Source of the DNA: Cyanophora paradoxa CCMP329
Lineage: Eukaryota > Plantae > Glaucophyta
NCBI GenBank assembly: GCA_004431415.1
Contig: QPMI01000602.1
Span: 1-64,000, forward strand
Direction: 5' to 3'
DNA: 64,000 bases
Shown piece by piece: positions 13,705-22,700 of this stretch. Made by a program: the position numbers and the translations under genes. The notes under the pieces are model-generated. The model made no database searches. It had not been told where the DNA came from and saw nothing but the letters and a program-made list of their open reading frames with translations. Position 1 is the stretch's first letter. Each line of letters starts with the position of its first letter.

Positions 13705-16700
13705 ATGGCGGCCGTAGTCCCCACAACTGCACTCTCCCGGTTGGGAAAGGTCTGCCGCCTAGCGCTGTTGTATCTGTGCTTCTATTCTTAATGCCCATCG
13801 GTTGCCGCGTAGGTGCAAGAGACCGGCGTGCTCGTTCTCGAGGATGGGTCGCGGTTCGAGGGCGTGTCGTTCGGCGCCAGCACCAGCGTCACGGGCGAAG
13901 CTGTCTTCCAGACAGGAATGGTCGGCTACCCCGAATCGCTCACCGACCCTTCGTACACCGGTGCGCGCGCCCCTCTTGGATTACTCGTGACCGCCCGGTC
14001 GGAGCTCAAGCTGATGCGCTCGCCACAGGCCAGATCCTGGTGCTCACGGTGCCGATGGTCGGCAACTACGGTGTGCCTCCCGATGTGAAGGATGAGTACG
14101 GGATCCCGAAGTTCTTCGAGTCCGATAAGATCCAGGTCCGGCCGCGCACACACGCCCGTTTCCGACGAGCCCCGCTCACTGCGGACGCGTACGCAGATCG
14201 CCGCGCTCATTGTTCAGGATTACTCGTTCGACAAGAGCCACTGGAATGCTGCCCGGTCCCTGTCGGAGTGGCTCAAGGCTAACAACGTCCCTGCTCTCTA
14301 CGGCATCGACACGCGCCTGCTCACGAAGAAGATCCGCGAGAAGGGAGCTATGCTCGGAAAGTGCGCGCGCTTTTGCGCCCCGCTGCACGCTGGACGACGC
14401 GTAGCTGATCCCGCACCGCAGGATCGTCTTCGGCAAAAACGAGCCGGAGTTCCACGACCCGAACAAGGACAACTTGGTGGCCAAGGTCTCCACCAAGGCG
14501 GCGAAGAAGTACTCGCCGCTGCAGTCCGTGCCGGCCGGCCGCCCGCCCCGCATCATCGCGATCGATTGCGGCATGAAGTACAATCAGGCGAGCCCCCGCC
14601 GCCGCGCATTGCTTCCTCTCTCCGCCCCTGACGCAGGGGCAGGTTCGGAGCTTCCTGAAGCGCGGCGCGGAGCTCACGGTGGTGCCCTGGGACTACGACT
14701 TCACGAAGGAGCCGTTCGACGGCCTGTTCATTTCCAACGGGCCCGGCGACCCCACGATCTGCACGCCCACGATCGCCCACATCCGCAAGGCCATGGAGGT
14801 GACCGCCCCGCGCTGCCCGCATCGCCGCCCGCCCTGACCGCCGCCCCCATGCAGCTCGGCAAGCCCGTGTTCGGAATTTGCCTCGGGAACCAGCTCCTGT
14901 CGCTGTCGGCGGGCGCGAAGGTGTACAAGCTGAAATACGGCAACCGCGGGCACAACCAGCCGTGCACCAACGTGAAGACGGGCCACTGCTACATCACGAT
15001 GCAGAACCACGGCTTCGCCGTCGACAATGCGAGCCTCCCGACAGACTGGGAGCCCTATTTCATCAACGCCAACGACAACACCGCCGAGGCGAGCCGCCCG
15101 TACCGGCGGCCTCAAGAGCCCCGCCCTTCCTTACCCTTCCTTTTCGGCAGGGCGTGCGGCACAAGAGCAAGCCGTTCTTCAGTGTGCAGTTCCACCCGGA
15201 GGCGAAGGGCGGTCCGCGCGACACGGACTTTCTTTTCGACCAGTTCCTGCAGATCGTCCGCGGCGAGATGAGCTGGCCGCCCCCGGAGAAGCTTGTCGTC
15301 CGGCACCGCGTCAACGTCAGCAAGGTCCTGATCCTCGGCTCTGGCGGCCTCAGCATCGGCCAGGCCGGCGAGTTCGACTACTCGGGTGCGGCCCTGCCCC
15401 CTCGACCCTCTCGCGCCCGGCCCCCTCTCAGACGGGGGCGGCGCGCAGGCTCGCAGGCGATCAAGGCGCTGCGGGAGGAGAAGGTGCACACGGTCGTGAT
15501 CAACCCGAACATCGCGACGGTGCAGACGTCGGCGGGCCTGGCGGACAAGGTCTACTTCCTGCCCGTCACCCCCGAGTTCGTCACCAAGGTCATCGAGAAC
15601 GAGCGCCCCGACGGCATCCTCTGCACGTTCGGCGGGCAGACAGCCCTCAACTGCGCTGTCAAGCTCTACAAGGACGGCGTCTTCAAGCAGTACGGCGTGC
15701 AGGTGCTCGGCACGCCCATCGACGCCATCATCGCGACGGAGGACCGCGAGATCTTCGCGGATAAGCTCAAGGAGATCGGCGAGCGCATCGCGCCCAGCAT
15801 CGCCGCCCGCTCCACCGAGGCGGCCCTCGCCGCCGCCGACAAGATCGGGTACCCCGTCATCGTCCGTGCCGCCTTCACGCTGGGCGGCCTCGGCTCCGGC
15901 TTTGCGAACAACTCGGCGGAGCTGGCGTCGCTGTGCCAGACGGCCTTCTCGGGGGCGGACCAGGTCCTCGTCGAGCGCTCCATGAAGGGCTGGAAGGAGG
16001 TCGAGTACGAGGTGGTCCGCGACGCGTACGACAACTGCATCACCGTCTGCAACATGGAGAACTTCGACCCGCTCGGCATCCACACCGGCGACTCCATCGT
16101 CGTCGCCCCCTCCATGACCCTCACCGACCAGGAGTACCACATGCTCCGGTGCGGCAGCCCCGCCGGCCGGCCCCGTGCGCCTCCTCGCTGACGCCGCGCC
16201 GCGCAGCGAGGTCGCCATCCGCACCGTCCGCCACCTCGGCATCGTCGGCGAGTGCAACATCCAGTACGCCCTCAACCCCGACTCGGAGGAGTACTGCGTC
16301 ATCGAGGTCCGCCCCATCCCCGCGCGCCCCCGCGTTCCCCTTCTCCGGCGGCCCAAGTGATGATCTAACCAATACCGCTTATTAATAACCATAGCGCGGC
16401 CTCGGCCCCGCGATGAGAGAGAAAAGTTCCTGATCCGCTGCCCCAACTTCCACTACTCCCTGCGCCGCCTCGTGGCCCAGAACCGCGCTCACGTCGCTTT
16501 CTCGGCAGGTGAACGCCCGTCTCTCGCGCTCCTCGGCGCTGGCCAGCAAGGCGACGGGGTACCCCCTCGCCTTCGTCGCCGCCAAGCTCTCGCTCGGTCC
16601 GCTTCTTTCCTCCCCAGATTCTACGGCCCCCCCTTCCGACCACATCTTCAAGTGATGATCTAACCAACACCGCTTATTAATAACCATAGCGCGGCTTCGG

Positions 16701-19700: not shown

Positions 19701-22700
19701 ATAAATCCCCAATTACGGAGCTTCATTTGCCTAGAGGACATAAAGTTGGCGGCTCGAAGCGCAAGCTTGAGAGTTGTCCCGTTCCCGTCCTCAACATAAT
19801 GCGTTTGGCGTTGCCTTGCCTGGTTCTTTGGTCTGGGCCGGGCGTCAAACTGGCGCGCATATTACATAAATCCCCAATTAGAGCTTCATTTGCCTAGAGG
19901 ACATAAAGTTGGCGGCTCGAAGCGCAAGCTTGAGAGTTGTCCCGTTCCCGTCCTCGACATATTGCGTTCCGTGTTACCCTGTCCGGCTTTTAAATCTGGC
20001 CAGGGCGTCAATAACCACGCGCACATTATTTTAATGCCCGTCCCTTGCACGTTTCCGCGCCCTTCCGCGCGAGCCGGCGCCGACCTTGCCACGCGCGCAG
20101 ATCATCTCGTCGGAGCTGTCGGAGGGGGCGAAGGCGGGCGGCAACGGCAAGGAGGGGGCAGACGCGGACGGGATCGGGGACCTGCTGCAGAAGCACAACA
20201 TCGAGCTGGTGATCAACCTGCCGTCGCGCAACCTCTTCCGGCGGCCGGCCTCGTTCATGTCCAAGGGCTACATGACGCGCCGCAAGGCCGTCGACTTCTC
20301 CCTCCCCCTCCTCACCAACATCAAGTGCGCCAAGCTCTTCATCGAGGCCATGTACAGGCTGGTGCGGCCCTCATCCCCTTGCCCCCCGCCTCGCCCCCTC
20401 GCCTCTTCCCGACGCCCCCGCAGCAAGTGCACAAGCGCGGCGCGACGGGCGCGATGCCCATCGAGCGGTGGGACTACCGCTCCCGCAACCGCGTCGTCCG
20501 CATGCCGGTGCGGCCTGGAACCCGCACGCCGACCTCGCCTCGCGTCATCTGACAGGCCGGGGCCGCGCAGGGGCTCATCGACGTGCACGTGCACTTCCGA
20601 GAGCCCGGGGCGACGCACAAGGAGGACTGGGACACGGGCTCGGCCTCGGCGCTCGCCGGCGGCTTCACGATGGTCTGCGCGATGCCCAACACGAACCCGC
20701 CCCTCACGGACCCCGCCTCGTTCGAGCTGTGCAAGCAACTGGCGGCCGCCAAGGCCCGCTGCGACTACGCCGTCTACCTGGGGGCCGGCCCCGCCAACGC
20801 GCAGCTGATCGCGCCGCTGGCGCCCGTCTCGGCCGGCCTCAAGATGTACCTCGACTCGACCTTCGGGGAGCTGCGGCTGGACGACCAGCGGCTCTGGATG
20901 AGCCACTTCGAGGCGTGGCCCAAGAACGTGCCGATCGTGGCGCACTCGGAGGGCCGCACCATGTCCGCCTTCATCCTCTTGGCGGCCCTCTACGACCGCG
21001 CCGTGCACATCGCGCACGTCTCGACCGCCGAGGAGATCACCATCATCAAGGCCGCCAAGGCGCGCGGCATCCGCGTCACCTGCGAGGTCGCCCCGCACCA
21101 CCTCTTCTTCATCTCCGACGAGATCCCGAGCTTCTCGTGCGGCTGCGCCGGCCGCGGCGAGGTCCGCCCCGTCCTCGCCAAGGCCTCGGACCGGGACGCC
21201 CTCTGGGAGCACATGGACGTCATCGACATGTTCGCCACGGACCACGCGCCCCACACGCTCACCGAGAAGGACGGCGCGAAGCCGCCCCCGGGCTTCCCCG
21301 GGCTGGAGACGTGCCTCCCGCTGCTGCTGACGGCGGTCAGCGAGGGCCGCCTCACGATGGAGCAGCTGGTGCAGAAGATGTACGTCAACCCGCGCAAGAT
21401 CTTCCGGCTCCCCGAGCAGAAGGACACGTTCATCGAGGTGGACCTCGACGAGGAGTGGACGATCCCGAGCGCGCCGGCCTTCTCCAAGTGCGGCTGGACG
21501 CCCTTCGCCGGCCGCCGCGTCAAGGGCAAGGTCCGCCGCGTCGTCCTCCGCGGCGCCCTCGCCTACCTCGACGGCAAGGTCCGCCCGCCCCCGCTCGATG
21601 CCCGCTTGCCTCCCCGCGGCCTTCCCGACGCCGCCGCCCGCGCAGGTTCTCGTGCAGCCCGGGTACGGTCGGGACGTGCGCGAGACGCCGGCGGCCCCCG
21701 CGGTGCGGGCGCAGATCCCCGATGCGGCGGCGCTGGCGCCAGAGAGCCCGGCGCACGCGCCGCACCCGCGGGCTGCGCGCGCGGCGGCGGCGCCGGCGGC
21801 GGTGGAGATCGCGGTACTGGAGGACAAGGCGGCGAGGATGGGGGAGGCGGCGAGCCGGGCCGGGCCCTCCTCCCTCGCCGAGTTCGCGATGCGGAGCCTG
21901 GAGCCGCGGCCCCTCTCGCCCGTCGGGGAGACCTCGGGCGCCGCGGCGGCCATGGCGGCCGCTGCGGACGCGCCGTCGGCGATCATGATGAAGAAGAAGC
22001 GGGGCTCGCTGGCGATGGGGCGCGACGCGCACCCGCCGGTGGCGCCGGTGCCGAGCACGCCGGGGACGAGCAGCCTGCCGCCGCCCGAGGACGGCCCGTC
22101 GCTGTTCGCGCGGGACATCCTCTCGGTCTCCCAGTTCAGCAAGCAGGACCTCACGTACATCTTCAAGGTCGCCTCCGAGTTCCGCAAGCGCCTCATGCGC
22201 CAGGAGGTCCGCCCCGGCGTCTCCCCCACTCCTCCGAAGGGTGTTCTTTGCTGAGGCGGGGCGGGGGCGCAGGTGATCGAAGTGTGCAAGGGGACGGTGC
22301 TCTGCAACCTCTTCTTCGAGCCGTCGACGAGGACGTCGTGCTCGTTCCAGGCGGCGATGCAGCGGCTGGGCGGGACGGTGCTCTCGCTGACGGACATGAA
22401 GAGCACGTCGGTCTCCAAGGGGGAGACGCTGGAGGACACGGTGCGGGTGGTGGACACGTACGCCGACGTCGTCGCCATCCGGCACCCCGAGAAGGGCGCG
22501 GCGGCGCTCGCCGCGCAGGCCGCCATCCACCCGGTGATCAACGCCGGGGACGGCGTCGGGGAGCACCCGACGCAGGCCCTCCTCGACCTCTACACGATGC
22601 GCGAGGAGCTCGGCACCGTCAACGGCCTCACCGTCACCATGGTCGGCGACCTCAAGAACGGCCGCACCGTCCACTCCCTCGCCCGCCTCCTCGCCACCCA

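What the first reader, a model, noticed from the sequence alone, without database searches (positions are those of the whole stretch)
16307..20100. CAD pyrimidine-synthesis gene is a multi-family snoRNA host with nine intronic guide RNAs
Seen: CAD introns are normally ~60-70 nt, but four are expanded (16307-16508, 16597-16792, 17596-18132, 19349-20100). Each expansion is filled by sense-oriented units with C/D or H/ACA boxes and rRNA-antisense elements. Known: snoRNA hosts are usually ribosome or translation genes, and polycistronic intronic clusters occur in green algae and plants. Inference: a metabolic enzyme host carrying amplified homo-clusters could couple pyrimidine supply to rRNA modification, with several targets at decoding/P-site and PTC-proximal positions.
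Basis: partly seen in the sequence, partly recalled or inferred. Interest (0 to 1): 0.8.

Follow-up and report, generated by a model that had tools for sequence, protein, structure and literature searches.

The report
Nine snoRNA genes in CAD introns
Four enlarged introns of a pyrimidine-synthesis (CAD) gene carry nine small guide-RNA genes of three kinds; this layout is real but already known from algae, plants and animals, so it is a sound but ordinary find.

Summary
The host has full CAD architecture. The long introns hold 2 + 3 + 4 sense-strand units. Family A is box C/D, with one copy in each of two introns. Family B is box C/D, three copies. Family H is box H/ACA, four copies with a 165-nt period.

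Similarity between copies stops at the unit edges. The three B copies are identical from box C to box D, yet each has its own complementary terminal stem (p <= 0.002). H folds as hairpin-hinge-hairpin-tail with correct box spacing.

Two guides are perfect antisense to conserved rRNA: B guide 2 (15 nt, 18S) and A guide 1 (13 nt, 5' end of LSU). The other two C/D guides and all H/ACA pockets have no target better than shuffled controls. The proposed P-site and peptidyl-transferase targets are therefore only weak candidates.

No Rfam family matches. Mature RNAs were not shown.

Nothing supports coupling pyrimidine supply to rRNA modification. The scan holds 25 unchecked snoRNA notes in this genome, with hosts of many kinds, and one on this window's H/ACA array. 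Verdict: new members of a known kind.

The parts
14474..23165 (+). Host gene, part examined. CAD-type multi-enzyme: GATase, CPSase large chain (both halves), MGS-like, amidohydrolase/DHOase-like and Asp/Orn carbamoyltransferase domains.
   Evidence: Pfam hits on exon and ORF translations searched apart, by reference. A spliced mRNA contig of about 6.9 kb is present in runs X1 and X3.
16307..16508 (+). Expanded intron (202 nt) holding family A copy 1.
   Evidence: GT..AG joint in 4 runs.
16354..16438 (+). Box C/D unit A1. Box C 16357-16363, 13-nt LSU antisense 16375-16387, internal hairpin, C'-like 16410-16416, guide 2 16417-16429, box D 16430-16433.
   Evidence: The 3' end lies about 70 nt before the 3' splice site.
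16597..16792 (+). Expanded intron (196 nt) holding family A copy 2.
   Evidence: GT..AG joint in 3 of the 4 runs; the contig of the fourth ends before it.
16649..16733 (+). Box C/D unit A2. Box C 16652-16658, LSU antisense 16670-16682, C'-like 16705-16711, guide 2 16712-16724, box D 16725-16728.
   Evidence: It is 96% identical to A1 inside the unit and about 45% outside. Both guide stretches are invariant. One change improves the internal hairpin.
17596..18132 (+). Expanded intron (537 nt) holding three family B copies separated by T-rich spacers.
   Evidence: GT..AG joint in 4 runs. Low-depth contigs from X1 and X3 lie inside it at 17586-17727, 17845-18005 and 17957-18124.
17683..17793 (+). 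Box C/D unit B1 with its own external stem (17683-17695 / 17780-17793). Box C 17697-17703, guide 1 17704-17721, D' 17722-17725, C' 17744-17749, 18S antisense 17760-17774, box D 17776-17779.
   Evidence: (stem -22.1 kcal/mol, p 0.002).
17833..17936 (+). Box C/D unit B2 with its own stem (17833-17842 / 17927-17936). Box C 17844-17850, D' 17869-17872, 18S antisense 17907-17921, box D 17923-17926.
   Evidence: (stem -14.8 kcal/mol, 0 of 500 shuffles).
17966..18065 (+). Box C/D unit B3 with its own stem (17966-17973 / 18058-18065). Box C 17975-17981, D' 18000-18003, 18S antisense 18038-18052, box D 18054-18057.
   Evidence: (stem -14.6 kcal/mol, 0 of 500 shuffles).
19349..20100 (+). Expanded intron (752 nt) holding four family H copies with a 165-nt period.
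   Evidence: GT..AG joint in 4 runs. TRF period 165, 99% matches.
19404..19539 (+). Box H/ACA unit H1. 5' hairpin 19404-19462 with an 8x8 pocket, H box 19464-19469, 3' hairpin, AUA 19529-19531, ACA 19534-19536.
   Evidence: Fold -51.7 kcal/mol, z -2.1. Consensus structure; coordinates.
19569..19704 (+). Box H/ACA unit H2, identical to H1.
19734..19869 (+). Box H/ACA unit H3, identical to H1 within the unit; there is a 2-nt deletion in the following spacer.
19897..20028 (+). Box H/ACA unit H4. The 5' hairpin is identical to H1-H3. The hinge box is changed to ACAUAU (19957-19962). The 3' hairpin and its pocket are rewritten. ACA is at 20023-20025, aligned with the AUA of H1-H3.
   Evidence: It is either a diverged paralogue or a decaying copy; undecided.

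Best explanation
The four long introns are snoRNA gene carriers. When the CAD pre-mRNA is spliced, the excised introns are debranched and trimmed by exonucleases. Trimming stops where snoRNP proteins sit on the box C/D kink-turn or on the H/ACA hairpins.

Expected products:
- two isoforms of a C/D RNA of about 85 nt (family A);
- three identical copies of a C/D RNA of about 90 nt (family B);
- three identical copies and one divergent copy of an H/ACA RNA of about 130 nt (family H).

The tandem copies need endonucleolytic or spacer-trimming separation, as in plant and green-algal polycistronic clusters.

Predicted functions:
- Family B guide 2 directs 2'-O-methylation of the first U of the conserved 18S motif CCCUUAGAUG. 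From memory this is the 3' strand of helix 34, about E. coli U1211.
- Family A guide 1 pairs with 13 nt at the 5' end of LSU rRNA. It either methylates there or chaperones that region.
- The second guides and the H/ACA pockets have targets that could not be determined without this organism's own rRNA and snRNAs.

What is shown: introns, units, boxes, stems, folds and the two complementarities. What is inferred: processing, RNP assembly and the modifications.

The arrays arose by local tandem duplication. CAD is one convenient, well-expressed host among many, not a regulatory partner.
For: - Exact splicing of the four introns in transcript contigs of 4 runs.
- Sense-strand units with canonical box spacing, 77 and 83 nt from C to D.
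- Family A similarity is confined to the unit: 96% against about 45% in the flanks.
- Family B copies are identical from box C to box D. Their diverged flanks still form copy-specific 8-13 bp terminal stems (p 0.002, 0/500, 0/500). Cognate flank pairs are the strongest in the cross matrix.
- Family B has an internal D' CUGA and C' UGAUAA flanking a 7-bp hairpin.
- The 15-nt stretch at positions 2-16 upstream of box D was used as a search pattern derived from the window. It found 116 metagenome contigs. 100 of the 115 used also carry the conserved 18S 3' motif, and 4 were confirmed as full rDNA units by Rfam.
- Family A has a 13-nt perfect match to LSU positions 41-53 in 3 of 4 reference rDNAs and in 13 loci overall.
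- Family H folds as two hairpins with internal pockets. The H box is 15 nt from the 5' pocket. AUA/ACA is 15-16 nt from the 3' pocket.
- Units are 49-54% G+C islands in 62-86% G+C intron flanks.
- No tRNA is present.
Against: - No mature small RNA has been seen. The runs are contigs of what look like mRNA libraries. The only intronic contigs (intron 3, depth 4-5 against about 100 for the mRNA) span spacers, so they are precursor or excised intron, or DNA carry-over.
- No Rfam family matches, even at E <= 10.
- Box C of family B ends in C instead of A.
- Family A has no recognisable D' box after its 13-nt antisense, and its terminal stems are weak (p 0.026 and 0.20).
- Four of the seven distinct guide elements (A guide 2, B guide 1, H 5' pocket, H4 3' pocket) have no candidate target. 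The H1-H3 3' pocket has only a weak one, within chance.
- The 13-nt family A match is only just above the 95th percentile of shuffles (13 against 12.5).
- The reference rRNAs come from unrelated metagenome eukaryotes, not from this organism.
Confidence: 0.85

Rival explanations
1. The units are intronic tandem repeats or decayed snoRNA pseudogenes that no longer make stable, functional RNPs. Box-like motifs and rRNA matches are relics or chance.
For: No mature RNA has been shown. There are no Rfam hits. Most guide elements lack a significant target. H4 has a degenerate hinge box, and some pairs of its upper stem are broken in the aligned register. H1-H3 are so recent that their identity says nothing about selection.
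Against: Family A copies in two different introns keep 96% identity only inside the unit. Family B flanks have diverged yet keep copy-specific complementary stems placed exactly at the boxes. A perfect 15-nt antisense sits at the canonical distance from box D. Relics would not keep these features.
Confidence: 0.07
2. One reading: the snoRNA load in CAD is functionally linked to the host. Either it couples pyrimidine supply to rRNA modification, or snoRNP assembly on the introns regulates CAD splicing and expression.
For: Only circumstantial. Three families and nine copies sit in one metabolic gene whose product feeds RNA synthesis. The mRNA is well expressed, with contig depth about 90-108 in X1 and X3.
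Against: Co-transcription with any well-expressed host gives the same result. About half of the intronic snoRNAs in Ostreococcus tauri sit in genes unrelated to ribosome biogenesis or RNA processing, including two in consecutive introns of a nucleoporin gene. In that organism abundance follows snoRNA stability, not host expression (PMC7671301). Unchecked scan notes place similar arrays in RPB1, RPC1, exportin-1, ferlin, zinc-finger, eIF4G, NOP2, ESF1 and SDA1 introns of the same genome.
Confidence: 0.05
3. The units are copies of a mobile or retroposed snoRNA-derived element that happened to land in CAD introns.
For: Several copies are present. snoRNA retroposons are known in mammals (from memory).
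Against: All copies are head-to-tail within introns and in sense orientation. There are no poly(A) tails or target-site duplications. No other copy lies in the 64-kb window. Flanks of the tandem H copies are part of the repeat period, which points to unequal crossing-over rather than insertion.
Confidence: 0.03

Closest known systems
Intronic snoRNA gene clusters of Chlamydomonas reinhardtii (Chen et al. 2008, Genetics 179:21, as cited in PMC7671301) and of rice and Arabidopsis
   Same: Several snoRNA genes sit in one intron of a protein-coding gene, in sense orientation. Many are tandem isoforms made by local duplication. C/D and H/ACA types both occur.
   Different: Here three families are spread over four introns of a single metabolic gene. 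The lineage has no published snoRNA catalogue in the library searched, if the unverified Cyanophora guess is right. I could not read the Chlamydomonas paper itself.
Ostreococcus tauri intronic snoRNAs in consecutive introns of one host (PMC7671301)
   Same: There is one snoRNA per intron in consecutive introns of a non-ribosomal host (a nucleoporin). Hosts have many functions. This matches family A.
   Different: O. tauri snoRNAs are almost all single-copy. Here families B and H are amplified in tandem inside one intron.
Animal multi-snoRNA host genes (UHG, GAS5; Drosophila dUhg; from memory)
   Same: Many introns of one gene each yield a snoRNA through splicing-dependent exonucleolytic trimming. 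The two single-copy units end about 60-70 nt before the 3' splice site, as is optimal in mammals (Hirose and Steitz 2001, from memory).
   Different: Those hosts are mostly non-coding or translation-related and carry one snoRNA per intron. Here the host is a large enzyme gene and two of its introns are polycistronic.
U43 / snR70 family (guide for 18S Cm1703 in human, Cm1639 in yeast; the C1402 equivalent; from memory)
   Same: Family B guide 1 places its fifth nucleotide opposite that cytidine and pairs perfectly with CCGCCCGU.
   Different: Pairing stops after 8 bp, with a mismatch at guide position 10. The 9-bp core reported for C/D duplexes is therefore not met. There is no Rfam similarity. 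It is not filed as a member.

Membership tests
box C/D snoRNA | Box C (RUGAUGA) near the 5' end and box D (CUGA) near the 3' end | tested here: met
   Family A has GUGAUGA and CUGA, 77 nt apart. Family B has A/GUGAUGC and CUGA, 83 nt apart; the seventh base of box C is C, not A.
box C/D snoRNA | Terminal stem that brings boxes C and D together | tested here: met
   Family B: three different 8-13 bp stems abutting the boxes, p 0.002, 0/500 and 0/500 against shuffles, and cognate-specific. Family A: weak and offset, p 0.026 and 0.20.
box C/D snoRNA | Internal D' and C' boxes | tested here: inconclusive
   Family B has CUGA and UGAUAA around a 7-bp hairpin, so the feature is met. Family A has a C'-like GCGAUGA, but no CUGA-like D' follows its antisense stretch.
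box C/D snoRNA | Antisense element of 10 or more nt ending 1-2 nt upstream of box D or D', with the target opposite the fifth nucleotide | tested here: met
   B guide 2 has 15 of 15 Watson-Crick pairs at positions 2-16, to 18S. A guide 1 has 13 of 13 to LSU 41-53, but the register is ambiguous. B guide 1 and A guide 2 have no match above shuffles.
box C/D snoRNA | Stable RNA of about 70-100 nt bound by fibrillarin, Nop56, Nop58 and Snu13 | not testable with these tools
   Only contigs of mRNA-type runs were available.
box H/ACA snoRNA | Hairpin, hinge (ANANNA), hairpin, then a tail with ACA 3 nt from the 3' end | tested here: met
   H1-H3 have two hairpins, ACAUAA at 19464-19469, and AUA at 19529 and/or ACA at 19534. 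H4 has hinge ACAUAU, whose last base deviates, and ACA at 20023.
box H/ACA snoRNA | Top of the pseudouridylation pocket lies 14-16 nt upstream of box H or ACA | tested here: met
   The 5' hairpin gives 15 nt. The 3' hairpin gives 15 nt to AUA in H1-H3 and 16 nt to ACA in H4. It would be 20 nt if the downstream ACA of H1-H3 were the box.
box H/ACA snoRNA | Bipartite complementarity of a pocket to rRNA or snRNA flanking a uridine | tested here: inconclusive
   The best candidate is the LSU P-loop, with 8 bp plus 3 bp (two of them G-U), scoring 9.5-10 against a shuffle 95th percentile of 10.5. Other pockets do no better. This organism's own RNAs were not available.
any described Rfam snoRNA family | Covariance-model match | tested here: not met
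   Nothing at gathering score over the window. Nothing at E <= 10 in the introns, apart from one chance sRNA hit in an exon.
intronic (polycistronic) snoRNA gene cluster | Units in sense orientation inside an intron that is actually spliced, with several units per host | tested here: met
   Joints are present in 4 runs. There are 1, 1, 3 and 4 units per intron.
CAD multi-enzyme (host) | GATase, CPSase, DHOase and ATCase domains in one reading direction, on one transcript | tested here: met
   Pfam hits on exons and ORFs searched apart. The CPSase part lies on one spliced contig of about 6.9 kb. The joined protein model was deliberately not built.

The most novel reading that the evidence does not exclude
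The snoRNA load is not incidental. Either snoRNP assembly on four CAD introns modulates CAD splicing or output, tying pyrimidine synthesis to ribosome production. Or family A, whose 13-nt antisense lacks a D' box, acts as a U8-like chaperone of the LSU 5' end rather than as a methylation guide.
Probability: 0.06. Interest if true: 0.55.

Novelty: new member of a known kind. Interest (0 to 1): 0.25.

Why it matters
The find adds three unannotated snoRNA families (nine genes) to a genome whose lineage seems to have no published snoRNA catalogue. It also gives a clean example of how tandem duplication builds and diversifies guide RNAs. Family B copies keep an identical core with re-invented terminal stems. 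H4 keeps one hairpin and has the other rewritten.

It predicts one concrete, testable methylation site in 18S helix 34. For genome annotation it explains four 'oversized' introns and a 165-bp 'satellite'. It does not open a new question. The gene layout and the use of non-ribosomal hosts are established.

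Tried and rejected
- Rfam at gathering score and at E <= 10: no snoRNA family.
- Scan of viral contigs with the 15-mer, hoping for rRNA: 26 chance hits, none rRNA.
- Search for close CAD relatives to inspect orthologous introns: the best fragment is only 65% identical. Its contigs (L143-L145) are a low-G+C eukaryote with a CPS-ATC fusion and no comparable introns. No comparative evidence was obtained.
- Family B guide 1 against a 13-bp site in L041 LSU: the site lies in a variable 3' expansion segment absent from the other rDNAs. 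Rejected as a general target.
- An alternative family A guide ending at a CUUA D'-like motif: no target.
- H/ACA pockets scanned over 115 rDNA loci with one mismatch allowed: only wobble-rich candidates.
- Mapping the 18S site to E. coli numbering by BLAST: no match. E. coli numbers in this report are from memory.
- O. tauri supplements searched for equivalent guides: none.
- Full-text search for the guide strings found 394 papers. I did not open them and take the listed ones for rRNA primer sequences.
- Scan notes searched by sequence: blank, which means nothing.
- The Chlamydomonas paper is not held.
- No paper links a snoRNA host with CAD.
- tRNA scan: none.

Rules followed. Locus L046, a contig labelled as human-gut metagenome, was left out of all comparisons as a precaution.

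Full report
**Observation.** The region was read directly. Repeat finding gives three families:
- two 90-nt copies at 16354-16443 and 16649-16738, 93% identical;
- three copies starting near 17694, 17841 and 17972;
- four copies with a 165-nt period at 19402, 19567, 19732 and 19895. The first three are essentially identical and the fourth is 82% identical.

No other copy lies in the 64-kb window.

Contigs of four public runs of the same organism were laid on 16200-20200. One spliced contig of about 6.9 kb in X1 and X3 skips 16307-16508, 16597-16792, 17596-18132, 18547-18613 and 19349-20100. All are GT..AG. The contig resumes at 16206 after a 57-nt intron. The neighbouring introns are 57 and 67 nt. 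Two more downstream, read by eye, are about 50-62 nt.

**Host.** Exons and ORFs were translated and searched apart, by reference. Pfam finds GATase, CPSase_L D1, D2 and D3 (both halves), MGS-like, Amidohydro_1 and OTCace along the + strand from about 14.4 to 23.2 kb. That is the CAD architecture.

**Family B (intron 17596-18132).** The three copies are identical from the UGAUGC of box C through box D and two bases beyond. The sequence on both sides is unrelated.
- Each copy has box C (A/GUGAUGC) and box D (CUGA) 83 nt apart.
- Each has an internal CUGA and UGAUAA flanking a 7-bp hairpin.
- The 20 nt before box C and after box D form a stem in each copy: -22.1, -14.8 and -14.6 kcal/mol. Shuffled flanks give p = 0.002, 0/500 and 0/500.
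- The three stems have different sequences. Each 5' flank pairs best with its own 3' flank.

An identical core with re-invented complementary ends is what selection for a box C/D kink-turn and processing stem predicts. It is the strongest single argument that these are genes rather than a satellite.

**Family A (one copy in each of two introns).** Identity is 78/81 inside the unit, against 26/52 and 32/77 in the flanks. Boxes are GUGAUGA and CUGA, 77 nt apart, with a C'-like GCGAUGA and an internal hairpin. One of the few differences improves that hairpin. Terminal stems are weak (p 0.026 and 0.20). No CUGA-like D' box follows the first antisense stretch. Both units end about 60-70 nt before the 3' splice site. 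From memory of Hirose and Steitz 2001, this is the favourable position for splicing-dependent C/D processing.

**Family H (intron 19349-20100).** Each unit folds into two hairpins with internal loops (-51.7 kcal/mol, z -2.1).
- The 5' hairpin has a 6-bp lower stem, an 8x8 pocket and an 8-bp upper stem. It is followed by ACAUAA 15 nt from the top of the pocket.
- The 3' hairpin is followed by AUA (15 nt from its pocket), then UU, then ACA.
- In H4 the 5' hairpin is untouched. The hinge box reads ACAUAU. The 3' hairpin and both pocket strands are rewritten. An ACA stands in the column where H1-H3 have AUA, 16 nt from the pocket. That column is therefore probably the functional tail box.
- H4 is either a paralogue with a new specificity or a decaying copy. 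I cannot tell which.

**Targets.** The window holds no rRNA. I took the 15 nt at positions 2-16 upstream of box D of family B, reverse-complemented it, and scanned public metagenome contigs. It found 116 loci. 100 of the 115 used also carry the conserved 18S 3' motif. Rfam confirmed four complete rDNA units: L033, L041, L042 and L121. B guide 2 is therefore a perfect 15-nt antisense to a conserved 18S segment. Its fifth nucleotide lies opposite the first U of CCCUUAGAUG. From memory this is the end of helix 34, near E. coli U1211. An attempt to map this by BLAST failed.

A guide 1 is a perfect 13-nt antisense to LSU positions 41-53 in three of the four units and in 13 loci overall. Its score of 13 is only just above the 95th percentile of shuffles (12.5). 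With no clear D' box, the methylated position is ambiguous (model positions 43-45).

B guide 1 pairs with CCGCCCGU of 18S and places the C1402-equivalent at position 5. It then meets a mismatch at position 10, and its score of 9.5 equals the shuffle median. Its better 13-bp match in L041 lies in a variable expansion segment. A guide 2 has no target.

The best H/ACA candidate is the 3' pocket of H1-H3 on the LSU P-loop, with 8 bp on one side and 3 bp (two of them G-U) on the other. It scores 9.5-10 against a shuffle 95th percentile of 10.5. The 5' pocket and the H4 pocket give only wobble-rich hits. The P-site and PTC-proximal targets are not.

**Expression.** The runs are contigs, apparently of mRNA libraries. 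They cannot show small RNAs. Three short, low-depth contigs (depth 4-5 against about 100) lie inside the family B intron. They cross spacers or the exon border, so they reflect precursor or excised intron, or DNA carry-over. Mature snoRNAs are therefore not demonstrated.

**Comparison with what is known.** No Rfam family matches, even at E <= 10. These are new families by sequence. The layout is established:
- Plants and Chlamydomonas carry intronic polycistronic clusters with multiple isoforms.
- Ostreococcus tauri has 72 intronic snoRNAs. Only 33% sit in ribosome-biogenesis genes and 18% in RNA-processing genes.
- O. tauri also has snoRNAs in consecutive introns of a nucleoporin gene, and their abundance is set by RNA stability rather than by host expression (PMC7671301).

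No paper in the library links a snoRNA host with CAD. None describes snoRNAs of Cyanophora paradoxa. Another agent guessed that organism for this genome (note s1-509560), and I did not test the guess. It fits the 70% G+C of the window only through my memory of that genome.

The scan holds 25 unchecked notes on snoRNAs in this genome. Most of those shown describe intronic tandem arrays, in genes as varied as RPB1, RPC1, exportin-1, ferlin, a zinc-finger gene, eIF4G, NOP2, ESF1 and SDA1. One note covers the H/ACA array of this very window (s1-603186). If these hold, CAD is one host among many.

**Verdict.** The snoRNA reading is well supported (0.85). The metabolic-coupling inference is unsupported (about 0.05). 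The find is a new member of a known kind. No comparative evidence from related species could be obtained.

Noticed in passing
window 16848-16888 and 19024-19064: A 41-nt direct repeat at 78% identity lies in exons. It falls at equivalent places of the two homologous CPSase halves, so it reflects the ancient internal duplication of the enzyme and not a mobile repeat.
   Followed up: partly
window 17794-17826, 17937-17964 and 17596-17676: The spacers between the family B units are T/C-rich (36-39% G+C in a 70% G+C window). These pyrimidine tracts could serve as processing or protein-binding sites in the polycistronic intron.
   Followed up: no
L041 (metagenome contig Ga0209542_10013343) 2620-4912 and 6056-10333: This rDNA unit has an unusually long SSU (2293 nt) and LSU (4278 nt). 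One of its LSU 3' expansion segments carries a 13-bp match to family B guide 1 that the other rDNAs lack.
   Followed up: partly
L143 7946-14352 (ENA metagenome contig): This low-G+C eukaryotic contig has a GATase-CPSase-ATCase fusion without a DHOase domain. The short 'gaps' between called genes read as CPSase coding sequence, so in-frame stops are probably sense codons (a variant genetic code) rather than introns.
   Followed up: partly
window 16519-16587: There is a weak Rfam hit to the bacterial sRNA CcsR1 (19 bits, E 0.21) inside a CAD exon. I take it for chance in G+C-rich coding sequence.
   Followed up: yes
window 22748-22799 and 23166-23239: C-rich low-complexity tracts (a poly-C run and CCCCTC-type repeats) lie at the 3' part or end of the CAD gene.
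   Followed up: no
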